Shown: positions 28,997 to 63,612 of the stretch, piece by piece | How positions within the stretch are numbered: the stretch's first letter is position 1 | How the letters are laid out: every line of letters begins with the position of its first letter | Virus record (IMG/VR): IMGVR_UViG_3300044625_001067 | Location: 1-64,000 of that record | Direction: 5' to 3' (one strand) | DNA length: 64,000 nucleotides | Program-made: the position numbers and the translations under genes | The notes under the pieces: model-generated | Told to the model about the DNA's origin: nothing | The model's database searches: none | The model's input: the letters and a program-made list of their open reading frames with translations, nothing else

Positions 28997-30376
28997 AAAG
29001 CTTAGCTTAAACGTCCCTTGCCAAGGGCGGTTTACCCCCTTTGCATTTCCGAAAGGAAAGCGGTATAGTTACTTTGTAACAACCTTGTCCCCCTATGACA
29101 ACTTGGCGCTACAGCGACCAAATGAACCCCTACGGGTTTAAAGACCTAGTAGAAGGTGTGAAAACTCCGCAGTCTCACCCGTACAGCTACGACCCTTTCA
29201 CGATCTGGAAGAACCGTGTAAAGTCGACAAATGCCGTCTACTCCGACCGACTTCTGAGTTGGGATCGCAAAAGGCACGACGAACTTTGCAAGAGACACTT
29301 CAAAAATCAAGGGCACGACTGGTCTCATCGCGATCCCCGCAAAATTGAACGCTTTCTGAGAGATTACTTCGACAGTCCCGCACTGGTTCTTTGCGAGGTT
29401 GTCCAGGGTTGCAACTTAAGTAATGGGTACCCCTACTGGGCCTTTCTCTACACTTCACCTGCACTTGAACAATGACCCACATTTCCTTCCTAACTCTCGT
29501 CCCTCTAGCAGAAACTCACTTCGACGTCACATCAGTGCCAAGGGTGGGAGATGAGATTTGCCTGGAAGCTCCTAATGGTGCTCTTGTGATGTTCAAGGTG
29601 AAAAAAGTCACATGGTACGCGGCAAGAGAGCCCTACAAGGGGCTTGAGGCAGAAGTTGATCTTTCGCTGGTGGGGCGCCAAGGGGGTCACCTCTTGCACT
29701 AGGGCGGTTTACCCCCTTGCCCCTGCTGCTAAACCACGCTATAGTAAATACAGCGAACCAACTCACGCACTCCAAAAATGAAGATCAACTTTCGCACCGA
29801 GTCATCGGTCAAACTTCAGAGGAAGTCCTGCAAATCGTCCGTAGTCCCCCGTGTAGGTGAAACGATTGAGTTACCTGCTCGAGACGGGGAGGAGCCTCTT
29901 ACGGCTGCGTACACAGTGAGTAGAGTAGTTTGGGAGATAAACGATTTCTACACGGATACAGATGACCTTCAAGTTACGGTCCACCTGGTTTTTCTCGGGT
30001 TTGAAGGACCCACGACCCAATCGCCATTCCCATTCCCCCTTCCCGCATGAACACCGAAGCCATCGAAGCGGCTTGCAACGAAGCTTGCCGAGACGTTGCA
30101 GGGCTGATACTCTCCCGCAAGGCTTCAGGTAGGCCCTTACCAACATCTGAGGTTTTAGCGGTTGGGCTGGAACGATTGCTTTCTCACGGGGTCACACAGA
30201 AAGACCTGTGGAACTGTGTAGATGCCTTGTTCAGGAGGGCCGAAGACCTGAAATTTCAGAAACTTGTAGAGTTTCGCACCCTAAAGTAGAACGGTAAACC
30301 GTTTGCTCCGGGGCGGTTTCCCCCCTTGTTTCTGCGTCGCAGAAACGGTATAGTTACTTTATTGACCTCCGACCCA

Positions 30377-31111
30377 ATGACCACCTTTCAGTTCTACGAA
30401 GTTGGCGGTTGCGTCCGAGATTCTCTCCTTGGCCTTTCAAGCAAGGACGTTGACTTCTCCGTTGTTGCTCCCGACGGCTTCAACACAGCAGATAGTGCCT
30501 TTCTGGCTATGGAAGCCCAGCTTACCGAGCAAGGCTTTCAAATCTTCGAGTCTCGCCGTGAGTTCCTGACTATTCGGGCGCGGGTCCCGAAGGGCCATGA
30601 ACTGGGAGCCCGCACCGCTGTCGCCGATTTCGTACTGGCCCGCCGAGACGGCCCTTACAGCGATGGCAGGCGGCCAGACTGGGTCGCCCCTGGTACCCTG
30701 GCCGATGACCTGGCTCGGCGTGACTTTTCTGTAAATGCACTCGCCCGAGGCGTGGACGGCACCCTGATAGACCTGTTTGGTGGTGTGGAGGATTTGGGTG
30801 CCAGTCTGCTGCGCTTTGTGGGTGACCCTACGAAGAGAATCGCTGAGGATGGCCTCCGTGTGATGCGTGGACTCCGCTTTCATGTAACCAAGGGGTTTGA
30901 TGTCGAGGCCGAAACTTGGAAAGCCCTTATCTCCGAGTTCGCTGCGGAGAAGCTCTCGAAAGTCTCCGTCGAAAGAGTGCGCGAAGAGCTGAACAAAATG
31001 TTCCGTGCAAACACCTTGCACTCTCTTCGTTTGCTCGGTGAGCTGCCTCAGCACACCCAAGAAGCGATCTTCCGCGACGGTCTCCGCCTCGACGCCACAA
31101 TGGCTCAGTGA
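30377..31111 (+). CDS. cca: tRNA nucleotidyltransferase (CCA-adding/poly(A) polymerase family)
   Basis: 'VGGCVRD.LLG...KDVDF', 'DLARRDFSVNALA', 'EDGLRVMRGLRF', 'VSVERVREEL'. Confidence 0.92.
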   Translation: MTTFQFYEVGGCVRDSLLGLSSKDVDFSVVAPDGFNTADSAFLAMEAQLTEQGFQIFESRREFLTIRARVPKGHELGARTAVADFVLARRDGPYSDGRRPDWVAPGTLADDLARRDFSVNALARGVDGTLIDLFGGVEDLGASLLRFVGDPTKRIAEDGLRVMRGLRFHVTKGFDVEAETWKALISEFAAEKLSKVSVERVREELNKMFRANTLHSLRLLGELPQHTQEAIFRDGLRLDATMAQ

Positions 31112-33848: not shown

Positions 33849-34351
33849 CCCCGCGTCTACCCTATAAAACATAAGCAGGGCGGTTTCCCGAACATAAGCA
33901 GGGCGGTTTCCCGGCTTGTTTCTGCTCAGCAGAAACGGTATAGTAAGTTCATGAAAAGCAAAGCCCCGATGATCTACGCCACCGCCGCTCGCTCCCCAAT
34001 CGCGCACATCCTGGGCGGGTCCCAGTTCACCGCAGAACCTTGCGACTCTCCCGCAAAACAGCGGAGGCAGTGGTGGGACGTGTGTGAGCGCCCAGACCAA
34101 GACATTTGCCTTGAGGACGGCGAGTTTCAGCTTTCCGGACCGCACGGCTTCCGCAGAATCGCACGGTTTACAGGGCGAATGCGCTGGGTCAACTCCCACA
34201 CCTGCGCCCCCACAGTCGAAGTCTTCGATGTGGAAACGGTAGTTGCAATGGTTGGTGACCTGCCTGTGATCCTGGGGTGCCGAGGCGAGCGCATCAAGGG
34301 AACCTGGTGGACTCACTGGAATGCTGTGAACCACGATGTTGTTGCCTTGCA

Positions 34352-34816
34352 GTGAAGAACGTGAAAGTTTTCCTTGACGATGAAAGGCCCACGCCAGACG
34401 GCTGGGTCCGTGCCTTCACAGCTCCTGAAGCCATCGATCTTCTTAAAACCGGAAAGGTTACACAACTTTCCCTTGACCACGACCTTGGGCCGGAAGACGC
34501 AGGAACTGGATACGACGTTTGCCTGTGGGTGGAAGAGAAAGTCTTCTCTCAAGACTTTTGTACTGAGGACCCTTTTACACCTCCAATCATGAGTGTGCAT
34601 TCCGCCAACCCTGTTGGCCGGCAACGAATGGAATTTGCTATTCAAATGATTTACCATCACTTCAAGGTTACTCAGCCTGTGGTGTGGGACTCCTTTAAGG
34701 AAACCCTCCAAGAGAAGCGACGTAGCGGGTCCAGAGAAGCCTTAGATGCCCTTGCAAAGCTTGGCCAGGAGTCTAATGATTACGGTGATGATTACGGACC
34801 AACGACGCGAGACTGA
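34352..34816 (+). CDS. cyclic-phosphate-processing receiver-like domain protein
   Basis: 'VFLDDER', 'LSLDHDLG', 'TGYD', 'VHSANPVG'. Confidence 0.8.
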   Translation: MKNVKVFLDDERPTPDGWVRAFTAPEAIDLLKTGKVTQLSLDHDLGPEDAGTGYDVCLWVEEKVFSQDFCTEDPFTPPIMSVHSANPVGRQRMEFAIQMIYHHFKVTQPVVWDSFKETLQEKRRSGSREALDALAKLGQESNDYGDDYGPTTRD

Positions 34817-36714: not shown

Positions 36715-37497
36715 ATGGCACACACTGACACCCTTGGAGACCTTCTTAAGGCTCAAGAACAGGCGGAAGCGGGGCGAAAAGCCGACCCGTTACTCCCCCT
36801 TATGGCACGTATCGACGGTAGCTGCTTCAGTGCTTTCACCAAGGGGCTAGAGCGACCATTTGACGAGCGATTTGTGCAGTTAATGATTGAAACCACCAAG
36901 TTTCTCGTTGACAAGAGTGAAGCCCAACTCGGTTACTGCCAAAGTGATGAAATTACATTGTTCTGGTACCTCGACAAGGAAAATTACTCGAACAGAGAGC
37001 TGTGGTTCGGTGGCAAGTTTCAAAAGCTGACCTCGATCCTGGCCGGCTCCGCATCGTCATACTTTAGTGCGAACATTCCAAAAGTTCTGCATGAAAAGCA
37101 AGGGTGCTATCCCGTGTTTGACGCGAGAGTGTGGAATGTCCCGGACTTAGAACACGCATACCTAAACTTTGTCTGGAGACAACAAGATGCGCAGAAGAAC
37201 TCCGTATCCATGTACGCTCGCCACTTCTTCTCCCACAAGTCTCTTCAGGGCAAAACCTGCCGAGAAATGAAGGGAATGCTTGCCGAAGTCGGAAAGCCAT
37301 GGGAAGAACTCCCTAAGTTTTTCACTCACGGAACGTTCGTGCGAAGGCAGCGCCGTCTTGTCAACCCCGAGGATCTTGTTGGCATTCCCGAGAAGTACCG
37401 CCCGACCAAGGCAATCGTTCGCACTGTTGTTGAAAAGTGGGAGCCTTATGGGGAACTTTCCTTGAGCGACTTTGCTCCTTGGGCTTTTGCTCGGTAA
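36715..37497 (+). CDS. thg1: tRNA(His) guanylyltransferase Thg1-like 3'-5' polymerase
   Basis: 'RIDGSCFSAFT', 'GYCQSDEITL', 'GKFQKLTS', 'FDAR', 'WRQQDAQKNS'. Confidence 0.93.
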   Translation: MAHTDTLGDLLKAQEQAEAGRKADPLLPLMARIDGSCFSAFTKGLERPFDERFVQLMIETTKFLVDKSEAQLGYCQSDEITLFWYLDKENYSNRELWFGGKFQKLTSILAGSASSYFSANIPKVLHEKQGCYPVFDARVWNVPDLEHAYLNFVWRQQDAQKNSVSMYARHFFSHKSLQGKTCREMKGMLAEVGKPWEELPKFFTHGTFVRRQRRLVNPEDLVGIPEKYRPTKAIVRTVVEKWEPYGELSLSDFAPWAFAR

Positions 37498-40787: not shown

Positions 40788-40831
40788 GGCGGGAAACCGC
40801 CCTTTACTCCCCTAGCCAAACAAGCTATAGT
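40788..40831 (+). promoter_or_regulatory. composite promoter 2 of RNA island
   Basis: GGCGGGAAACCGCC box, TTTACT, TATAGT 40826-31. Confidence 0.8.
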
Positions 40832-40911
40832 AAAGGGGTGGTTGAGAGAGCTTCGCTCCTCACTCTTTCCCCGGTCTCTCCGGGGGCAACTTGAAAATTT
40901 AAGATTTACAC

Positions 40912-41017: not shown

Positions 41018-41140
41018 GGTTAACGAGAGAGAAAGATCACGGTTCGAGTCCGGATCCAGCAGTAATTGAGCCCGTCAAGGGCATTCCTAGCCATGGTTGC
41101 GGGGTAGTTTAAGTGGCCTAAAAACATTCTCTCTTTTACC
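41018..41140 (+). ncRNA. circularly permuted tRNA-like element 1
   Basis: Order: GAGAGAG, T arm (TTCGAGT), acceptor closed by a linker, TA-GTTT..AAAC D arm, TTCTCTC. Confidence 0.65.
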
Positions 41141-41695: not shown

Positions 41696-41790
41696 AAGAC
41701 GTTGCGAGTCACAGCTGGTAACTGTGACAGGGGACAAGTCTGGTTGACGTTCTGTGCACAAGAACCACGGGTTCGATTCCCGGCGTCTTC
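41696..41790 (+). ncRNA. tRNA-like RNA with extra arm (Cys GCA-like loop)
   Basis: AAGACGT/GCGTCTT; GTCACAG/CTGTGAC hairpin; GTTCT-GTGCACA-AGAAC; CGGG-TTCGATT-CCCG. Confidence 0.6.
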
Positions 41791-41816
41791 GTTGGTTTGC
41801 TTTCGCAAACCCTTAC

Positions 41817-41865
41817 TTCCGCTCTTCTGAGGCCGAAAGCCACGGGGTTCGAATCCCGGCGGAAA
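41817..41865 (+). ncRNA. miniature tRNA-like element (acceptor + T arm, GAAA hairpin)
   Basis: TTCCGC/GCGGAA; GGC-CGAAA-GCC; GGG-TTCGAAT-CCC. Confidence 0.55.
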
Positions 41866-42097
41866 CTGCTCTAAGGGGCAATCACAGGCAAACGCGAGAG
41901 AAATTATGGACAATAGAGCCCGAGGATTTCTCGGATACTCACCCGGCTCCCCTTCGGGTCCCTTCAAGGGATAATTCCTTAGCCTCATAATGTGAGGGTC
42001 CTTTGGGCAACAGTTTCGATTGATCGTAAACCCTCGTTTGGAAAGTGCGGCGCATAACTAAGTCCGTGCGGAAGACAGCAGTGGGTGACCGTCGAAG

Positions 42098-42177
42098 TTG
42101 AAACGGAGCTGGACGCTCGTACTCGTACAGGATGGCCTCTGTGCGAGCAATGCAGGTTCGATCCCTGCCGTTTTAAT
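42098..42177 (+). ncRNA. D-stemless tRNA-like element with long anticodon-position stem
   Basis: TTGAAACG/CGTTTTAA; GCTCGTAC/GTGCGAGC; GCAGG-TTCGATC-CCTGC. Confidence 0.6.
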
Positions 42178-42310: not shown

Positions 42311-42951
42311 TTGGAGTGAGATTCGAGAGTTAGTCGCCTCGATACCCGCAGGGGTATAGCTTAAAGACTCCCTAACAGAGCGCACTCAACCCCAGTTATC
42401 CCACGGCGCTGGTCGCATAGCCGAAGGCACTTCCTGAAGAAGGAACAACTACCGCTGGCGGACCTGGGGCGGTTTGTTGTAAAACAATTGGTATTCAGTA
42501 GCGTCTCGCGAGCAACGCTGATACAACCAGGTCCTGCGACCCTAAGTTAATGCCTCCACGTGGCAGGGTTGGTAACTTTCCCTTTAGGAAAGGCCAAATT
42601 AACAGGGAATTTCTCATCCCGTACGTGAGAAACCTCGACCAAGGTGAGAAGTCAGTCGCTCAGGACACTCTGGGAAAACCTGCCAAGGGTTAATTTGGAC
42701 GGAACTTTCATCCGTTACGTGAAAGCTCTCCTTTGGATTTCGAAGGAATCCGGGGTACTTTGACAGCGATTTGCTCTAAAACCTTCAACAGGTCTGGCAA
42801 TTCGGTGAGTTTGATTCCCGCTTACTCCATTGGATTTTCTCAAATCCGACACCCCCAGAAAAGTTTACTACCTTTGGTAGTGACTATAATGGATGAGTCA
42901 CTGCTCTGCTTGGGCGAAAGCTAAACGGATAACCGGACCGTTCAGCTCCAA
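42311..42951 (+). ncRNA. large ornate structured RNA (~640 nt) with several pseudoknots
   Basis: Terminal stem TTGGAGTGA/TCAGCTCCAA and many long-range complementarities (see findings); no credible ORF. Confidence 0.7.
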
Positions 42952-43284: not shown

Positions 43285-43355
43285 TGTCCCACTAACGTGG
43301 GAGCAAGGAAACTTGATAACTAAGTAACTATTCTGTCGCAAATGCGATAGCATTT

Positions 43356-43429
43356 GGGGTCTTAGCTCATTTTGGTAGAGCATCTCTGTGGCACGGAGAA
43401 GGTGACCGGTTCGATCCCGGTAGATTCCA
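43356..43429 (+). tRNA. tRNA-Ala(GGC)
   Basis: GGGGTCT/AGATTCC with G3:U70; loop GTGGCAC. Confidence 0.92.
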
Positions 43430-43457
43430 CTTTGTGGGCAACCACAAACTAGAGCAA

Positions 43458-43531
43458 GGGCTTACATGTACCAAGGCTGGCGAGATTGCTTTGCAAGCAA
43501 ACTGTGAAGAGTTCGATTCTCTTTGGGTCCA
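43458..43531 (+). tRNA. tRNA-Ala(TGC), atypical D arm
   Basis: GGGCTTA/TGGGTCC with G3:U70; loop TTTGCAA; AAGAG-TTCGATT-CTCTT. Confidence 0.75.
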
Positions 43532-43552
43532 CTTTCGCTAACGCGAAAACAC

Positions 43553-43668
43553 GAGGGAGAAATGCCGGTTCAAGTCCGGCTCTGGGGGTCCTATAACGTG
43601 GGGTCCTGGGTAGTTTAACTGGTGCCAAGGACTTGTTATCAGTACGCACAAGTCCAAAAACTTCTTTC
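43553..43668 (+). ncRNA. circularly permuted tRNA-like element 2, with hairpin inserted in the D loop
   Basis: GAGGGAG, GCCGG-TTCAAGT-CCGGC, closed acceptor hairpin, TA-GTTT-AACTGGT..[GGACTTGT/ACAAGTCC]..AAAC, TTCTTTC. Confidence 0.7.
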
Positions 43669-43674
43669 CCACAA

Positions 43675-43747
43675 CCCCTCATAGTGTAGCGGCCAAGCAC
43701 GCACCTCTGTCTAAGGTGTATCACGGGTTCAAATCCCGTTGAGGGGG
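43675..43747 (+). tRNA. tRNA-Asp(GTC)
   Basis: CCCCTCA/TGAGGGG; CACCT-CTGTCTA-AGGTG; G73. Confidence 0.92.
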
Positions 43748-43783
43748 TTATTCCGAGGGGTGGCCACCCCAATGACGAATAAA

Positions 43784-43843
43784 GCCAGAGTCCCTGGATA
43801 GGGAAGAGTCGCGACAACGGGGTTCGAATCCCCAGCTCTGGTG
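43784..43843 (+). ncRNA. tRNA-like element lacking an anticodon arm
   Basis: GCCAGAG/CTCTGGT; CCCT-GGAT-AGGG; stub GTCGCGAC; GGGG-TTCGAAT-CCCC. Confidence 0.6.
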
Positions 43844-43860
43844 TTGACGCCCTGGATTGA

Positions 43861-43925
43861 GCGGTTAACCGTTTGCTCCGGGACGGTTTCCCGCCCTTTC
43901 ACCTTTCTGCGAAACGGGTTATAGT
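43861..43925 (+). promoter_or_regulatory. composite promoter 3 of RNA island
   Basis: GCGGTTAACCG and ACGGTTTCCCG boxes, TATAGT 43920-25. Confidence 0.8.
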
Positions 43926-44070
43926 AAAAGGGTGGTTACGGGAGTTTCACTCTCGGCCCCGAACGCTGCGGTTAGGTCTCTGCGTTAGTGAGACTGGCAG
44001 GAGCCCGCCTCCCAGGGCGATGCTTAAGAGCTAGACCCCTTTCTCTGGTTCCCGGAGAAAGATTCCCCGA

Positions 44071-44120
44071 TCCAACTGGTGGTTTGCCTCCGGCAAAGCA
44101 GGTTCGAGTCCTGCCTTGGA
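44071..44120 (+). ncRNA. miniature tRNA-like element
   Basis: TCCAA/TTGGA; CTGGTGG D-loop remnant; TTTGCC/GGCAAA; GCAGG-TTCGAGT-CCTGC. Confidence 0.5.
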
Positions 44121-44213: not shown

Positions 44214-44287
44214 TCTCTCATCGACTAATTGGTAATGTCACCGCCGGGTTACTGGTGGGAATCCAGGTTCGAACCCTGGTGAGAGTG
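44214..44287 (+). tRNA. tRNA-Asn(GTT)-like with 8-nt anticodon loop lacking U33
   Basis: CTCTCA/TGAGAG; CCGCC-GGGTTACT-GGTGG; CCAGG-TTCGAAC-CCTGG; G73. Confidence 0.7.
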
Positions 44288-51002: not shown

Positions 51003-51725
51003 CTAGTCCTTGCGAGGTTGCCGTGAAAATTGGTGAAAAGTATTTTGAGTGACGTTGTAAGCGGTTAGGCGACCCTTCGTCTTAATAAACGCACCCGTAT
51101 CTATATTTACGCGTTGTCCCGTCACAACGGGAAGGTGGTCCTGAGGTGGTTCCTCGAAGTTGGTTGGTGTGTGACCATGAACGACTTTCTTCAGTCGTGG
51201 GTTCCACCCTTCGAACTCCGGCCCGTATCTCAGAAAAGGTTGTCGAATCCACAGGAGTGCCTCGCCTCTCCCATCGACAATGAGCTTTGCAGGGTCGTGG
51301 CCAGGGTACACCCCTGCGTGAATGAAAAGGGTATCTCCAATTGTCATATACAAGGGTAGATTTCGAATCCACTCCTTATGTTCCCTCTCCATGTCACCCA
51401 CTTGGTCATAGTTTCCCCCGTTTCGAATCCACAGAACGTAACTACTTGGGTCGTCAAGGGCGTCAAGAAACATCCTCTCGTGGTTCCCCATCAGGGCATA
51501 AAAGGCTTGAAGCCCCCAACTTTCCGGATCGTAGAGGAGCTTTTTCGTATACTCCAAAACTTTCAGGTCGCCCCTACCACGATCAATCATGTCACCTAAA
51601 AGTATGACGGTGGCTTGAGACCCTTTCACCCAATTTAGAAATTGTTCGAAAAGAGTCCAGGTCGCGTGAATGTCCCCCAGAGCAACTACGTCCCCCGGCT
51701 GTATTTTGTTGTCGTAAGTTATCAT
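51003..51725 (-). CDS. calcineurin-like metallophosphoesterase
   Basis: 'GDIH', 'LGDMIDRG', 'GNHE', 'HAG', 'VHGHTP', 'NIDTGA'. Confidence 0.92.
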   Translation of the reverse strand: MITYDNKIQPGDVVALGDIHATWTLFEQFLNWVKGSQATVILLGDMIDRGRGDLKVLEYTKKLLYDPESWGLQAFYALMGNHERMFLDALDDPSSYVLWIRNGGNYDQVGDMEREHKEWIRNLPLYMTIGDTLFIHAGVYPGHDPAKLIVDGRGEALLWIRQPFLRYGPEFEGWNPRLKKVVHGHTPTNFEEPPQDHLPVVTGQRVNIDTGAFIKTKGRLTAYNVTQNTFHQFSRQPRKD

Positions 51726-51729
51726 CTTG

Positions 51730-52191
51730 TCAGTATATGAAGTCAATACGGTGGAAGGGTTCGTTGATATTCTTAAGGGAAGCTTGTAAGGAGGCGTGCA
51801 TGCGCTCAATCACTTCTTCCGGAACCCTACGCTCGCGAGAAGCATTCTGGCGCAGGCAAACGGTGAGGGGCTTGTCAAGGACAACAGCGGTGATTTTGCA
51901 GTAACCGTACGAGTTTAGCATAGCAACTGCTTCCTTGCGGTAAGCTGCCTTGTAGTGGGTACCATCCATAACTATAGTCCGACCTACACTCTCCTCCAGA
52001 ATCTCAAGCATGCGGTCGTGGATTTCTACGTAATTTCCTTGAATGTCCGCGTTCCCGTAGAGCTCAGCGCGGATTTCATCGCCGGAAATTACAACGGCAT
52101 CTGGGTGAAGCTCTAGTAGCTTAGCCACATGGGTTGACTTTCCGGAGCCAGGGGCACCGACCATCACGTATGCTTCGAGGTTGTTTTCCAT
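51730..52191 (-). CDS. P-loop polynucleotide kinase-like (AAA_33)
   Basis: 'VGAPGSGKST', 'SGDEIR', 'DGTH', 'RNASR.R.VPEEVI'-type motif. Confidence 0.85.
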   Translation of the reverse strand: MENNLEAYVMVGAPGSGKSTHVAKLLELHPDAVVISGDEIRAELYGNADIQGNYVEIHDRMLEILEESVGRTIVMDGTHYKAAYRKEAVAMLNSYGYCKITAVVLDKPLTVCLRQNASRERRVPEEVIERMHASLQASLKNINEPFHRIDFIY

Positions 52192-59853: not shown

Positions 59854-59965
59854 TGGGACCGGCAGGACTCGAACCTGCAACCGCGCCTTTAAAAGAGGTA
59901 ATTTAATTGCTGATGTATCTTTGTCAAGATAACTTTTCGTGCTCTACCAGTTGAGCTACGGTCCC
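59854..59965 (-). tRNA. tRNA-Lys(TTT) with 39-nt insertion in the anticodon stem
   Basis: GGGACCG/CGGTCCC; CG[39 nt]CCT-CTTTTAA-AGGCG; GCAGG-TTCGAGT-CCTGC. Confidence 0.8.
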
Positions 59966-60746: not shown

Positions 60747-60764
60747 TGTTTGCCGAAGGCAAAG

Positions 60765-60886
60765 TCGAAGAGGCAAGATTCGAACTTGCGTATGGCGGTT
60801 CCTTTTGCGTATTGGGTAATTGCTGAATTACCTAAGCTAGGTAATCTTTTTGCATTACCACTGCCTAACCACTTGGCTACTCTTCG
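60765..60886 (-). ncRNA. tRNA scaffold whose anticodon loop is replaced by an AAAAAG-hairpin-TCAGCAATT module
   Basis: CGAAGAG/CTCTTCG; GCC-AAGTGGTTA-GGC; GTGGT/ACCGC; GCAAG-TTCGAAT-CTTGC. Confidence 0.8.
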
Positions 60887-61759
60887 GTTTTTCGCACCGC
60901 TTTGCTGGGTGGAGGTTAAGGGGCGAGGAGTGGAACCTTGAGCTCCACATCCGTATCATAGGTTGAGGGTGCTAGGGGTAAACGGACTCAAGCAGAGACC
61001 CTCACTCGGGGCCTATCGCGGGGCACCACTCATATACTCTCGAAAGGCGTTCATAAAGTACCTTACGTCCTCCTCGTAAGATGTGTCAGGGTCGTACCAC
61101 GAGAAGGGGACTTTTTGCGATATCTTCTTGGAGAAAATAAGGTCATACTTGGCTTCATCGGAGAGCTTAGACTCGTAGATTGAGTTGGCCTCCCTGTACA
61201 CTTTGCTTAACTCCTCAAAGCCCTCTACCTCCTCGTTCGAGTCCAAGGCACCTTCATACCACTCTTCGAGGGACTCCACAATTTCTCCAAGCCTTGCGGC
61301 GTAGGTGTGTTGGTCGTCCCTCAGTAAACTGTCACGAAAAAAGCGCAATTGACTCAGGGGTTTGTTAAACTTCCACATTGCTTTAGGGCTAACTGAGAAA
61401 GGAGGTATCCCCGAGAAGATGCTGTATACTGGGGTGTTTTCCATACGTGAACTATAGCGGTTTTGCTGAGCGAAGGAAAGGGTGAAAACCGAACCGCTAG
61501 GGGCGGTTAACCGCCCTGGCTCAAATTTGTTACTCGTCGAGTCCCCTTATACAACTCGATAACTTCACCATCTTCCGACACTCTTACGTCGTAATGGCGG
61601 TACTCGGTTGGTATTTCGTGTCCAACTAAGGGTGTGAAGTCTCTTAGAAAGTTCTCCCAAGAAATAACATTGTCTAGGCCACGACTTCGTAAGTTTTCTA
61701 CAAGACTGTCGTACTCCTCCCGCAAAGAAGAGGAAAAGGGAGCCCACTCGCTATGCGAT

Positions 61760-62137
61760 TCACTTGGTTGACCTTGCATACAAATTCGACAGTAGCAGAA
61801 GCAGAATGAGTGACAAAATGGACACAGAGCCTAAGATTACGATTGGGCTAAACACTGAGAGCCATGGCCAGGTTATTTGCCCCGTTAATTTCAACCCGAG
61901 GAGGAGACCCTGGGCTGTCATTAACGAAACTGCGAGATTCTCAAACATTAGTTATTTCTCATGCGAAAGTAGTTGAAGAATCATCCAAAGGGCTCCCAAC
62001 CCAAGTAGAAAAATTGGCACAAGGGTTGGTGAAAGCACTGTGAGCCAGGGCCAGGAAACCTGACCCGTTACTTTCATAGTCATGAATACGGTTTGCAGAA
62101 CGATGCAGAGGGCACCCGGCAATTTGATCCAGATCAT
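61760..62137 (-). CDS. two tandem paralogous small membrane proteins (61952-62137 and 61760-61948)
   Basis: 'KVTGQVSWPWLTVLSP' vs 'KLTGQITWPWLSVFSP'; first overlaps the DUF2828 stop. Confidence 0.7.
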
Positions 62138-63612
62138 GCTCCTTCAGCAAATACGGCACCGACAGCGTCGTACCTTTCAGTGTAAACAGCGTCACGCATA
62201 GCCCCTACAGGCGTAATTACCCCGCCAGTAAGCACAGCTTTCAGGATTGAAGGGCTGCACCCGGAGACCAGGCAAGTTCCCGTGTCGTGCATTTTCATAG
62301 GTACGTTGCCGCTAGAGTTAACATTCCAGAAGACAAGTTCCGGCAAGGAATACCCAGCTTGAGCGTACTTGATTCGCACCGCCTCAAAGTTTGTCACTGA
62401 GTTGTTTCTGCAGCAGGAATCAAACTGCATGTCTGAGACAATGATGAGCTTGCGCGGCATTTCCCCCTCAGGAATATGGTTCATCGTGGCGGTAGCCAAC
62501 ACAAGATTGAAGACTGCTTGCAGGTCTGTATTCGCACCCCAGTCGGCCCGGCTAAGGTTACGAACACGCTCAGCAACGTTTCTCCCTGTAACCGACTGCA
62601 ACTGCGGTCTTCCGGAGAAGGTTAGGAACTTATCCTTCCATGCCCCGGTGTTACGCTCAGCGATGTACATCGCCAGCGAGATTGAAACCGCCATGGGCAT
62701 GCCGCCGTTATTTCCCATTGATCCTGAGACGTCGGCAATTACCAGGCCGTTCAGCTGCTCTCCTTCCATGTAGTTGGGTAGAGCCTCCCACATTAAGTTT
62801 AGAGTCTGATCGCTCCTCTCACCCCCGTAAAGGTACTTGTGCACGATCTCGTAAGGGTAGATCGTACCGGCATTGATTTTTGCCTCACCTTTCTCTACCG
62901 AGTCAAGGTAGGATTGGTAGCGGTCGCCGTCGCGCTTGGCGAAAGCTTTACGATACATGAAGCCTGCCCGAGAAGGCAACTTGCTATAGTCAATGCTTTC
63001 CCACTCACGGGCACACATTGGCTGCTCAACAATCTTGACTTGTGACCTGAGGGCAGTCAGTGCCTTGCGGTACTGCCTCTCGGTCCAACCCATTGCTTCG
63101 GCAATTTTTCGGCCAATCCTCTTAGAGTCCTGGCTGGAAGCGTTAATGGAAGGCAGCCACTTTGCCAGAAGTGAAACTGACTTTCCAACTTCCGTATTTA
63201 GGTCGGCGTTCAGTTGTGCCTTAATTGCTTCGAGTGCGATGCCCCAAACTAAGGTACCGTCAAGGGCTACCACATCATCCCAGCGACCGTACTGTGGAAT
63301 CAGGCTAACTAGCCTGGCACCAATTGCAGCATCATTTCGAACCAGCTCCTTGAAAACTTCTCGAAAGATCTTTCGCTCTCCCTGGCCCCCACGAATGTCG
63401 CGTGCCCAAAACAAGATTCGAGTTGCGGTCTCAGGGTCTTCTGCGTAGGCAAGGTTGAACAGTCGAGTTGCTTCGCTGATTTTGTCACGGCAAGCTGCAA
63501 TCTTTCCAAAAAGGTCCAGGCACTTAGACTCGGTGGACTTGTATGCCTTTGCACCGTTTGCAGTGGTAGTTTGGTTAAACTCGTTTTCGAGTGCGTTTAA
63601 AAAGGTTGTCAT
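62134..63612 (-). CDS. DUF2828 family protein (TROVE/Ro60-like helical domain + vWA)
   Basis: 'TANGA...ST..CLDLF', 'RDIRGGQGER', 'YGRWDD', 'AKWLPS', MIDAS 'DVSGSM', 'SDMQFD', 'VFWNV', 'VSGCSP'. Confidence 0.88.
   Translation of the reverse strand: MTTFLNALENEFNQTTTANGAKAYKSTESKCLDLFGKIAACRDKISEATRLFNLAYAEDPETATRILFWARDIRGGQGERKIFREVFKELVRNDAAIGARLVSLIPQYGRWDDVVALDGTLVWGIALEAIKAQLNADLNTEVGKSVSLLAKWLPSINASSQDSKRIGRKIAEAMGWTERQYRKALTALRSQVKIVEQPMCAREWESIDYSKLPSRAGFMYRKAFAKRDGDRYQSYLDSVEKGEAKINAGTIYPYEIVHKYLYGGERSDQTLNLMWEALPNYMEGEQLNGLVIADVSGSMGNNGGMPMAVSISLAMYIAERNTGAWKDKFLTFSGRPQLQSVTGRNVAERVRNLSRADWGANTDLQAVFNLVLATATMNHIPEGEMPRKLIIVSDMQFDSCCRNNSVTNFEAVRIKYAQAGYSLPELVFWNVNSSGNVPMKMHDTGTCLVSGCSPSILKAVLTGGVITPVGAMRDAVYTERYDAVGAVFAEGA

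What the first reader, a model, noticed from the sequence alone, without database searches (positions are those of the whole stretch)
43553..43668. Second permuted tRNA-like RNA, homologous to the first, with an extra D-loop hairpin
Seen: the same architecture and similar ends (ACGAGGGAGAAA...GGGTAGTTTAA...AAAACTTCTTTC vs ACGAGAGAGAAA...GGGTAGTTTAA...AAAACATTCTCTC), a perfect GCCGG/CCGGC T stem, an acceptor closed by a short loop and an 8-bp hairpin in the D loop. Two diverged copies argue for a functional family rather than an accidental rearrangement.
Basis: seen in the sequence. Interest (0 to 1): 0.76.

Follow-up and report, generated by a model that had tools for sequence, protein, structure and literature searches.

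The report
Permuted tRNA-like RNA family in phage
The flagged 116 bases encode a real, conserved small RNA that is built like a tRNA but with its parts in rotated order. It has no anticodon and no free acceptor end, so it most likely acts as a tRNA look-alike, as bacterial Y RNAs do, not as a decoder in translation.

Summary
Window 43553-43668 (+) folds as a four-way junction: a 7-bp terminal stem, a perfect T arm, a closed acceptor-like hairpin, and a D arm carrying an extra 8-bp hairpin.

The window is the first 64 kb of a 277-kb jumbo phage. It holds three paralogues: this one, 41025-41135, and one outside the window at genome 141263-141354 (-).

A covariance model finds the same RNA 20 times (19 distinct sequences) in related freshwater phage contigs and in cultured Synechococcus phage B3. 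It always lies inside tRNA arrays. Compensatory changes support the terminal stem, T stem and D-loop hairpin (92% of cells paired against 70% when shuffled).

It cannot be a decoding tRNA. There is no anticodon loop, the acceptor is closed, and CCA is not conserved.

The arm order is exactly that of YrlA, the tRNA-mimicking Y RNA of bacterial Ro60. The phage and its relatives encode a divergent Ro60-like protein (DUF2828 plus vWA). However, the RNA lacks both the canonical Ro motif and the ACAGCAA motif that I found in RNAs next to DUF2828 genes.

I commit to a Y-RNA-like tRNA mimic, but with only moderate confidence in the Ro link.

The parts
43553..43668 (+). Whole permuted tRNA-like RNA (copy 2, subtype B). 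The covariance-model match spans 43550-43673.
   Evidence: (83.9 bits).
43555..43561 (+). 5' strand of the terminal (closing) stem, GGGAGAA. It occupies the place of the 3' strand of a tRNA anticodon stem.
   Evidence: It pairs with 43662-43668 over 7 bp, two of them G.U. The helix shows compensatory changes across the family: 10 of 12 pairs.
43564..43580 (+). T arm: 5-bp stem GCCGG/CCGGC and loop TTCAAGT.
   Evidence: Four of the 5 stem pairs covary.
43581..43610 (+). Closed acceptor-like stem-loop (AS): a 7-bp helix (43581-87 with 43604-10) plus an apical 5-bp hairpin with a triloop.
   Evidence: The helix base C/U-G plus CUGG/YUGG is conserved, and the apex varies (a pentaloop or an extra hairpin in relatives).
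43611..43661 (+). U8-A9 equivalent (43611-12) and D arm. The stem is GTTT (43613-16) with AAAC (43658-61). The D loop carries G18/G19 equivalents and an inserted 8-bp hairpin (43629-36 with 43648-55).
   Evidence: The inserted hairpin covaries in 4 of 6 modelled pairs. The D stem is invariant, so comparison neither supports nor contradicts it.
43662..43668 (+). 3' strand of the terminal stem, TTCTTTC. Six nucleotides later tRNA-Asp begins (43675).
41025..41135 (+). Paralogue copy 1 (subtype A). It has a 9-bp terminal stem, a degenerate T stem, a long irregular AS, and the same D arm without the inserted hairpin.
   Evidence: It is a weak match to model R1 (20.4 bits). Apart from a near-identical variant (L396), a counterpart from a second lineage is L198:703-804, next to a subtype-B copy.
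43460..43547 (+). Upstream neighbour: a tRNA-Ala(UGC)-like gene (43460-43530) and a 6-bp spacer hairpin (43532-43547). These probably set the 5' end of the element.
   Evidence: Weak Rfam tRNA match (17.4 bits). 87% identity to annotated tRNA-Ala genes of Pseudomonas phages. The hairpin was read from the sequence, and the same spacer precedes copy 3.
43675..43747 (+). Downstream neighbour tRNA-Asp(GUC). Its RNase P site would set the 3' end of the element.
   Evidence: In relatives a tRNA follows within 0-14 nt, tRNA-Asp in 9 of the 17 subtype-B places examined.
62134..63612 (-). Ro60-like protein (DUF2828 helical domain plus a vWA domain with DVSGSM). It is a candidate protein partner; this is inferred, not shown.
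   Evidence: Pfam. In the fold search the top 12 PDB matches are all Ro60/TROVE. It co-occurs with the RNA in four independent phage records.

Best explanation
The element is one of three paralogous genes in this phage for a stable, non-decoding, tRNA-shaped small RNA. Its arms come in the order terminal stem, T arm, closed acceptor-like hairpin, D arm, terminal stem.

It is transcribed as part of the phage's polycistronic tRNA array. It is freed passively when host RNase P cuts at the 5' end of the next tRNA (tRNA-Asp, 6 nt downstream) and when 3' processing trims the preceding tRNA-Ala-like gene. The 7-bp terminal stem then protects both ends.

The conserved T loop and the GG of the D loop would give it a tRNA elbow. 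It has no anticodon loop and no free CCA end, so it can be neither charged nor used for decoding. It therefore acts by being recognised as a tRNA.

The most likely role is that of a Y-RNA-like (YrlA-type) tRNA mimic. It would work in the phage's tRNA repair and quality-control toolkit, probably together with the phage's divergent Ro60-like protein.

Shown here: the structure, the conservation, the genomic context and the co-occurrence. Inferred: the processing route, the tRNA-like fold in three dimensions and the protein partner.
For: - Structure and paralogues.
- Family: 20 matches (19 distinct sequences) from other viral and metagenome contigs and from Synechococcus phage B3, at 60-120 bits.
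- Covariation: 92.2% of cells paired against 70.5% in shuffles. 18 of 27 pairs show double changes. Slid controls reach at most 64%. RNAalifold recovers the terminal stem, T stem and D-loop hairpin on its own.
- Context: always inside tRNA arrays, 11-25 nt after one tRNA and 0-14 nt before the next.
- Distribution: no exact match of a strict sequence pattern taken from the family's conserved blocks in 185,579 bacterial and archaeal genomes.
- Expression: lake metatranscriptome contigs cover 43322-43900 with uneven depth along the array.
- Arm order identical to YrlA (Chen et al. 2014, PMC4201824).
- Ro60-like protein at 62134-63612: the top 12 PDB fold matches are all Ro60, with probability 1.0. 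Homologues are annotated 'Ro-like RNA binding protein'.
- Co-occurrence: RNA and protein are both present in all four independent records large enough to judge (G000, G001, G002 and phage B3; a fifth record, G003, carries the same element as G002). They lie 3.3-3.6 kb apart on the same strand in two of them.
- Other lineages: unannotated RNAs with T-AS-D order lie next to DUF2828 genes in mycobacteriophage Whirlwind (sub-threshold Rfam YrlA match, 38 bits), Felix-O1-like wV8, Enterococcus phage EFGrNG, Sinorhizobium phage phiM12 and Bacillus phage PBC2.
- Repair toolkit: the genome also encodes a Thg1-like enzyme, a cREC domain, a CCA-adding enzyme and an Rnl2-type ligase.
Against: - The RNA lacks the GNCGAA motif that marks Ro60 binding in YrlA.
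- It also lacks the ACAGCAA motif that I found in the RNAs lying directly beside DUF2828 genes. These include two normal-order tRNA-like RNAs in this window (59854-59965 and 60764-60886, minus strand). Those RNAs are better candidates for the protein's direct partners.
- In this genome the element is 18.5 kb from the Ro-like gene and on the other strand.
- A relative with a 66% identical Ro-like gene inside a 30-tRNA cluster has no match to the model within 10 kb.
- The co-occurrence could simply reflect shared ancestry within one phage clade.
- The Rfam YrlA model does not match the element.
- The D stem never varies, so comparison gives it no support.
- The RNA-seq evidence comes from assembled contigs only. 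No RNA ends were mapped.
Confidence: 0.5

Rival explanations
1. It is a Ro-independent tRNA mimic. The RNA would act alone as a decoy, sponge or regulator for a protein that recognises the tRNA body. Candidates are a host tRNA-targeting defence nuclease, RNase P or RNase Z, a modification enzyme, or the phage's own Thg1-like or CCA-adding enzyme.
For: It carries neither the GNCGAA nor the ACAGCAA motif. It lies far from the Ro-like gene in this genome and in phage B3. Unpaired sequence in the D loop (GGUGCAAAG) and tandem G.U pairs at the base of the acceptor-like helix are very strongly conserved, which suggests a specific protein contact of its own.
Against: No candidate target is identified. 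The same rare arm order is the hallmark of Ro-associated YrlA and recurs beside DUF2828 genes in five unrelated phage groups. The RNA co-occurs with the Ro-like gene in every sizeable record.
Confidence: 0.3
2. It is a two-piece tRNA-like RNA. RNase P would cut at the 5' side of the acceptor-like helix, as it does in Mycobacterium smegmatis YrlA. This would give two fragments held together by base pairing, with a 3' end that could receive CCA.
For: The acceptor-like helix is 7 bp and stacks on a T arm, which is the main RNase P determinant (Chen et al. 2014). Copy 3 and L198b have the loop UCCAU, which reads as discriminator plus CCA. The phage encodes a CCA-adding enzyme.
Against: CCA is not conserved: other members have UCAAU or UGAAU. 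In many members, including this copy, the helix continues into a further hairpin instead of single-stranded leader and trailer.
Confidence: 0.08
3. It is a true circularly permuted tRNA gene. The transcript would be circularised or its ends joined, then opened at the acceptor to give a working tRNA, as in the red alga Cyanidioschyzon merolae.
For: The 3' half precedes the 5' half, and the acceptor-like helix is 7 bp. The phage has an RNA ligase.
Against: The outer ends form a continuous 7-13 bp helix, with no 7-nt loop, no conserved anticodon and no bulge-helix-bulge motif. Only 2 nt separate this stem from the T arm, and there is no position-26 nucleotide. The D loop carries a 27-nt insertion. 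The acceptor apex is a conserved closed hairpin.
Confidence: 0.04
4. It is decayed debris of the tRNA array: the T arm of one dead tRNA beside the D arm of another, with no function.
For: This 4-kb region holds many orphan T arms and odd tRNA-like pieces. Tandem tRNAs can imitate the T-AS-D order: my descriptor produced such false hits in phages LP-125 and S13.
Against: There is no room in the flanks for the missing halves. There are three paralogues, and 19 distinct homologues in other phages keep all helices through compensatory changes.
Confidence: 0.02

Closest known systems
YrlA, the tRNA-mimicking Y RNA bound by bacterial and phage Ro60 (Rfam RF02553; Chen et al. 2014, PMC4201824)
   Same: The arm order is identical: terminal stem, T arm, closed acceptor-like stem-loop, D arm, terminal stem. 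Both have tRNA-type T and D loops, an acceptor-like hairpin of variable sequence, and a length of about 100-125 nt. Both occur in phages that carry many tRNAs and a Ro60-type protein.
   Different: There is no GNCGAA motif and no V arm. The terminal stem abuts the T arm, with only 2 nt between them, and there is an extra hairpin in the D loop. The Rfam model does not match. The element is embedded in tRNA arrays rather than lying beside the Ro gene. The protein in this phage is the DUF2828 type, which the TROVE Pfam model does not detect.
Circularly permuted tRNA genes of Cyanidioschyzon merolae and some other algae and archaea (from established knowledge of that literature, not tested here beyond the features listed)
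   Same: The 3' half of the cloverleaf is encoded before the 5' half.
   Different: Those genes mature into ordinary decoding tRNAs through a circular intermediate. This element has no anticodon loop, and its acceptor is closed by a conserved hairpin.
Phage T4 stable RNAs species 1 and 2 (rnaC, rnaD)
   Same: They are small stable RNAs of unknown function, encoded at the end of a phage tRNA cluster and processed with the tRNAs (annotation).
   Different: They show no similarity to this family. Model R1 gives nothing there above noise. rnaC has its T arm at the 3' end, in normal order.
Two-piece (permuted) tmRNA
   Same: It is a circularly permuted tRNA-like domain in which the T arm precedes the acceptor 5' strand. 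This phage has one at genome 104340-104723.
   Different: The element has no tag reading frame and no pseudoknots, is about 116 nt long, and is not called by ARAGORN or by the Rfam tmRNA models.

Membership tests
YrlA (Y RNA-like A, RF02553) | Arm order: terminal stem, (V), T arm, closed acceptor-like stem-loop, D arm, terminal stem | tested here: met
   Read from the sequence. Kept in all 19 distinct family members.
YrlA (Y RNA-like A, RF02553) | tRNA-type conserved nucleotides that allow an elbow (T-loop UUCRANU, GG in the D loop, U8/A14, a 15:48 pair) | tested here: met
   T loop TTCAAGT, TA before the D stem, AA then GG in the D loop, and A15 with the U preceding the T stem. These are invariant or nearly so in alignment A6. 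The three-dimensional fold itself was not tested.
YrlA (Y RNA-like A, RF02553) | GNCGAAN0-1G motif near the 5' end (the presumed Ro60 contact) | tested here: not met
   Copies 1 and 2 have ACGAGRG, which does not fit. The other members have no CGA at all.
YrlA (Y RNA-like A, RF02553) | Encoded within about 4 kb of the Ro60 gene and on the same strand | tested here: inconclusive
   There is no TROVE (PF05731) gene in the genome. A fold-level Ro60 homologue lies 18.5 kb away on the other strand. In relatives G001 and G002 the gene is 3.3-3.6 kb away on the same strand, but in phage B3 it is about 70 kb away.
YrlA (Y RNA-like A, RF02553) | Match to the Rfam covariance model at its gathering score (69 bits) | tested here: not met
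   No match at these coordinates even at E = 10.
YrlA (Y RNA-like A, RF02553) | Bound by the Ro60 protein in cells | not testable with these tools
   This needs immunoprecipitation or gel-shift assays.
Circularly permuted tRNA genes | The 3' half is encoded upstream of the 5' half | tested here: met
Circularly permuted tRNA genes | The outer ends can be joined to restore a 5-bp anticodon stem with a 7-nt loop and an anticodon | tested here: not met
   The ends form an uninterrupted 7-13 bp helix with no loop, and no triplet is conserved.
Circularly permuted tRNA genes | The sequence between the acceptor 3' and 5' strands is a removable spacer with trailer and leader character | tested here: not met
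   It is a conserved closed pentaloop or an extending hairpin, and CCA is not conserved.
Canonical tRNA (RF00005) | Cloverleaf in normal order, detected by tRNA models | tested here: not met
   ARAGORN and Rfam call the neighbouring tRNAs but not this element.

The most novel reading that the evidence does not exclude
The element may be the motif-less, circularly permuted member of an undescribed phage ribonucleoprotein system. The system would consist of DUF2828-type Ro60 paralogues plus arrays of tRNA-like RNAs.

The protein family is present in about 700 cultured phage genomes, including Felix O1-like, Listeria P100-like, KVP40-like and cluster L mycobacteriophages. The RNAs occur in both normal and rotated arm order, and most carry a conserved ACAGCAA motif that would be the protein's recognition site.

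In this reading, the permuted family found here keeps only the tRNA-shaped 'effector' half. It would compete with, or regulate, the Ro-bound RNAs for whatever tRNA-binding enzyme the particle recruits during infection.
Probability: 0.3. Interest if true: 0.8.

Novelty: new variant of a known kind. Interest (0 to 1): 0.62.

Why it matters
Phage tRNA arrays are usually read only as codon-usage or anti-defence supplies, and unannotated gaps in them are ignored. This gap holds a conserved structured RNA that current tRNA finders and Rfam both miss.

The RNA also links to a large protein family that is annotated only as 'Ro-like' or DUF2828 and has no described RNA partner. If the link holds, Ro/Y-RNA biology would extend to hundreds of well-studied phages. 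A cultured system, Synechococcus phage B3, is available in which to test what a viral tRNA mimic does during infection.

Tried and rejected
1. Rfam at both gathering and permissive thresholds found nothing at the element. The YrlA model alone, run over the whole genome, matched only ordinary tRNA parts.
2. Pfam TROVE is absent from the genome. A sequence search of the PDB with the DUF2828 protein gave nothing; only the fold search revealed Ro60.
3. The loop UCCAU in copy 3 looked like an encoded discriminator plus CCA. I rejected this because relatives have UCAAU or UGAAU.
4. A fourth genomic match to the model (131743-131837, 23.7 bits) is the 3' part of tRNA-Thr plus its trailer, so it is a false positive.
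5. T4 rnaC and rnaD are not related to this family.
A subtype-A pattern found no new lineage; L414 is a chance match.
7. The contig IMGVR_UViG_3300044675_005175 is identical to the window, so it adds no comparative information.
8. RtcB is absent from the genome.
9. A relative's Ro-like locus (L421) has no match to the model.
10. Supplementary tables of Chen et al. 2014 are not held, so I could not check whether any DUF2828 phage was in their list.
11. Literature searches for DUF2828, permuted tRNA in phages, and Ro-like proteins found no description of this RNA.

Full report
**What is in the sequence**

The window is the first 64 kb of a 277,244-bp phage record that is 98% complete. The genome has about 55 tRNA genes and a permuted tmRNA. 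Positions 40.7-44.8 kb are a gene-free stretch filled with tRNAs and tRNA-like pieces.

The flagged element reads, from 5' to 3', as follows:
- a purine-rich strand GGGAGAA (43555-61);
- two nucleotides, AT;
- a perfect T arm (43564-80);
- a hairpin that starts immediately after the T stem (43581-43610);
- TA;
- a D stem GTTT (43613-16) that closes with AAAC (43658-61) around a loop holding GG and an inserted 8-bp hairpin;
- without any spacer, TTCTTTC (43662-68), which pairs with the first strand.

The one correction is that the acceptor-like helix in this copy runs on into a second small hairpin rather than ending in a short loop. Folding energy alone is unremarkable (z about -1.8).

**Paralogues and homologues**

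Copy 1 at 41025-41135 shares the end blocks, the T loop and the D arm, but lacks the inserted hairpin and has a weak T stem. A scan of the whole genome for T arms that no tRNA finder claims turned up a third copy on the minus strand in the second tRNA region, at genome 141263-141354. It has the same spacer hairpin in front of it as copy 2.

Pattern searches of viral and metagenome contigs, screened with a covariance model (R1, built on five sequences), gave 20 matches (19 distinct sequences) of 60-120 bits. One match (78.8 bits) lies in cultured Synechococcus phage B3, in an unannotated 132-nt gap between tRNA-Lys and tRNA-Trp. A strict sequence pattern taken from the family's conserved blocks had no exact match in one genome for each of 185,579 bacterial and archaeal species.

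In one phage (L198) a subtype-A copy and a subtype-B copy lie 100 nt apart, so the two subtypes are old paralogues.

**Support for the structure**

The figures below come from the model-fitted alignment A6, which holds 20 matches and 19 distinct sequences.
- 92.2% of cells form standard pairs, against 70.5% in shuffles.
- 18 of 27 pairs show changes on both sides.
- Sliding the partners by one to three columns drops pairing to 39-64% and the covariation score from 0.53 to at most 0.18.
- RNAalifold, run on the same alignment without my structure, recovers the terminal stem, the T stem and the D-loop hairpin, with 13 of 17 pairs showing double changes.

The acceptor-like helix had to be analysed sequence by sequence because its apex varies in length. 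In 18 of 19 distinct sequences it is a C-G or U-G pair followed by 5-7 further pairs, sometimes across a 2-3 nt bulge. These pairs have a conserved CUGG/YUGG core with tandem G.U pairs and compensatory changes further up. The apex is a pentaloop (UCCAU, UCAAU or UGAAU) or an added hairpin.

The D stem never varies, so comparison says nothing about it. Because the alignment was fitted to the model, these counts lean somewhat towards the structure.

**Why it is not a tRNA**

Neither ARAGORN nor the Rfam tRNA model calls the element. Several features rule out decoding:
- The outer ends form an unbroken helix of 7 bp here and up to 13 bp in relatives, so there is no anticodon loop.
- The acceptor is closed, and CCA is not conserved.
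- Only two nucleotides stand where the variable loop should be.

The flanks leave no room for missing halves. The upstream tRNA-Ala(UGC)-like gene ends about 20 nt before the element, and tRNA-Asp starts 6 nt after it.

**Context and expression**

In the 19 places examined (17 of them subtype B) the element lies on the tRNA strand. In most it sits 11-25 nt after a tRNA, often with a small spacer hairpin, and 0-14 nt before the next tRNA. That next tRNA is tRNA-Asp in 9 of the 17 subtype-B places. The simplest route to a mature RNA is therefore passive release by the enzymes that process the neighbouring tRNAs. This is inference.

Assembled contigs from four lake metatranscriptomes cover 43322-43900. 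Depth along the 4-kb region is very uneven, which fits RNA better than contaminating DNA. However, the contigs give no RNA ends and no strand information.

**The Ro-like protein**

The arm order is that of YrlA, the tRNA-mimicking Y RNA bound by bacterial Ro60. [quoted passage not shown]

The Pfam TROVE model finds nothing in this genome. However, the ORF at 62134-63612 (minus strand) carries DUF2828 plus DUF7788 and a DVSGSM MIDAS motif. An AlphaFold model of it is of moderate quality (mean pLDDT 69). It matches Ro60 structures in the first 12 places of a PDB fold search, over the full length, at probability 1.0 and E from 8e-8 to 1e-4. Homologues at 39% identity are annotated 'Ro-like RNA binding protein' in mycobacteriophages, and the family is present in 695 phage records.

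The protein is present in all four independent records that hold the RNA and are large enough to judge. In two of them it lies 3.3-3.6 kb downstream on the same strand. The phage also encodes a Thg1-like enzyme, a cREC domain, a CCA-adding enzyme and an Rnl2-type ligase, but no RtcB. This fits the RNA-repair context described for jumbo phages (PMC7824862).

**DUF2828 genes in other phages**

In nine unrelated cultured phages the DUF2828 gene lies beside tRNA genes. A simple descriptor for T arm, 7-bp hairpin and D arm found unannotated RNAs with this rotated order on the gene's strand in five of them:
- Whirlwind, which also gives a sub-threshold Rfam YrlA match of 38 bits;
- wV8;
- EFGrNG (two RNAs);
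- phiM12;
- PBC2 (two RNAs).

The background rate of the descriptor was 56 hits in 5.76 Mb of other viral loci. Some hits are tandem tRNAs and therefore false.

All these RNAs, and further repeats beside the gene in all nine phages, share a motif of the form AAGR, a few bases, then ACAGCAA.

In this window two normal-order tRNA-like RNAs lie downstream of the Ro-like gene on its strand (59854-59965 and 60764-60886). Each carries a small hairpin followed by UCAGCAAUUA in place of the anticodon arm. Their counterparts form arrays with several CAGCAA motifs directly after or around the gene in the relatives L421, G001, G002 and B3. Some of these RNAs have the same unusual D arm (TAGTTTAAT...AAAAC) as the permuted family. 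No ARAGORN-called tRNA of this genome has that D arm.

**What this means for the finding**

The rotated tRNA-like order is a recurrent companion of Ro-type proteins. The element also shares a D-arm type with RNAs that are physically linked to the Ro-like gene.

But the element itself lacks both the GNCGAA and the ACAGCAA motifs. It is far from the gene in this genome. It is also absent within 10 kb of a 66% identical Ro-like gene in another relative.

I therefore rate the claim that it is a real, conserved, non-decoding tRNA mimic at about 0.9. I rate the full preferred explanation at 0.5; its core is the more specific claim that the RNA works as a Y-RNA-like partner or adjunct of the Ro-like protein. 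The main rival, at 0.3, is a tRNA mimic that acts on some other tRNA-binding protein. The two-piece, true-permuted-tRNA and debris readings are minor.

**Novelty**

I found no description of this RNA, or of any RNA partner for DUF2828 proteins, in the searchable literature. The kind of molecule, a Y-RNA-like tRNA mimic, is known. This is a new variant: it sits in a new setting (inside tRNA arrays), lacks the canonical motif, and co-occurs with a divergent Ro paralogue.

**Limits of the work**

- Homologues were collected by exact DNA patterns, so the family's true spread is underestimated.
- The covariation counts are not corrected for phylogeny.
- The protein model is of moderate quality.
- No RNA ends were mapped.

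Noticed in passing
window 59854-59965 (-) and 60764-60886 (-): Two normal-order tRNA-like RNAs lie 1.2-2.3 kb downstream of the Ro-like gene on its strand. Each has a 7-bp acceptor, a D arm and a T arm, with the anticodon arm replaced by a small hairpin plus UCAGCAAUUA. ARAGORN calls them tRNAs with introns. Counterparts form arrays right after or around the Ro-like gene in relatives (L421, L403, L404, L401).
   Followed up: partly
L409 6493-6700, L410 6723-7400, L415 5675-5840, L416 2440-5830, L417 5833-5910, L418 3345-5960, L419 8164, L420 5297-5820, L411 1612 and 4975: A shared motif (AAGR, 3-6 bases, then ACAGCAA, often followed by UUA..AAC) is repeated 1-8 times in the non-coding DNA beside DUF2828 (Ro-like) genes. 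It occurs in nine phages of hosts from several phyla. It is possibly the recognition site of this protein family.
   Followed up: partly
NC_022052.1 42225-42279; NC_012749.1 26860-26911; MW004545.1 76243-76294 and 76575-76629; NC_027204.1 100443-100502; L416 3652-3704 and 4042-4094: Unannotated RNAs with the YrlA arm order (T arm, closed 7-bp hairpin, D arm) lie next to DUF2828 genes in cultured phages Whirlwind, wV8, EFGrNG, phiM12 and PBC2. In wV8 the RNA lies under a hypothetical ORF annotated on the opposite strand.
   Followed up: partly
window 42539-42604 (+): There is a sub-threshold Rfam match to an HDV-like ribozyme (25.6 bits, E = 0.1). In all four metatranscriptomes, contigs end at 42530-42533 and new ones start at 42549-42555. 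That is what self-cleavage at the ribozyme's 5' end would produce.
   Followed up: partly
window 41767-41783, 41843-41859, 42152-42168, 43818-43834, 44098-44114, 44263-44279 (+): Further well-formed T arms are claimed by no tRNA finder. Some belong to acceptor-plus-T-arm minihelices without an anticodon arm (for example 43785-43843 and 41816-41868). The one at 42152 has a homologue in another phage contig (L388:336-432).
   Followed up: partly
window about 40826-40850 (+), 43917-43945 (+), 61455-61490 (-): A repeated promoter-like motif (CCCTTT, a spacer, then AAACNNGCTATAGT) heads the tRNA and small-RNA arrays and one ORF. It is probably a phage-specific promoter.
   Followed up: no
window 30326-31111 (+), 34277-34816 (+), 36715-37497 (+), 51003-51809 (-); genome 71728-72207 (-): The phage carries an RNA-repair toolkit: a CCA-adding enzyme, a cREC (cyclic-phosphate processing receiver) domain, a Thg1-like 3'-5' polymerase, a metallophosphoesterase and an Rnl2-type RNA ligase. 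RtcB is absent.
   Followed up: partly
genome 104340-104723 (-), outside the window: ARAGORN calls a permuted (two-piece) tmRNA with the tag ANNIVKFERIAVAV. It also calls a tRNA-Gly with a 709-nt insertion at 141493-142298, which may be a group I intron.
   Followed up: no
L411 2790-2850 (Vibrio phage phi-pp2): An unannotated acceptor-plus-T-arm minihelix lies in an intergenic gap 2.2 kb upstream of the DUF2828 gene. It resembles the minihelices seen in this window.
   Followed up: no
L151 about 2482-2590 (G005): A normal-order tRNA-like RNA ending in GCCA has a D loop (GTAGTTTAAAGAGGTGCAAAAG) that closely resembles that of the permuted family. It may be an unrotated counterpart. ARAGORN does not call it.
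   Followed up: no
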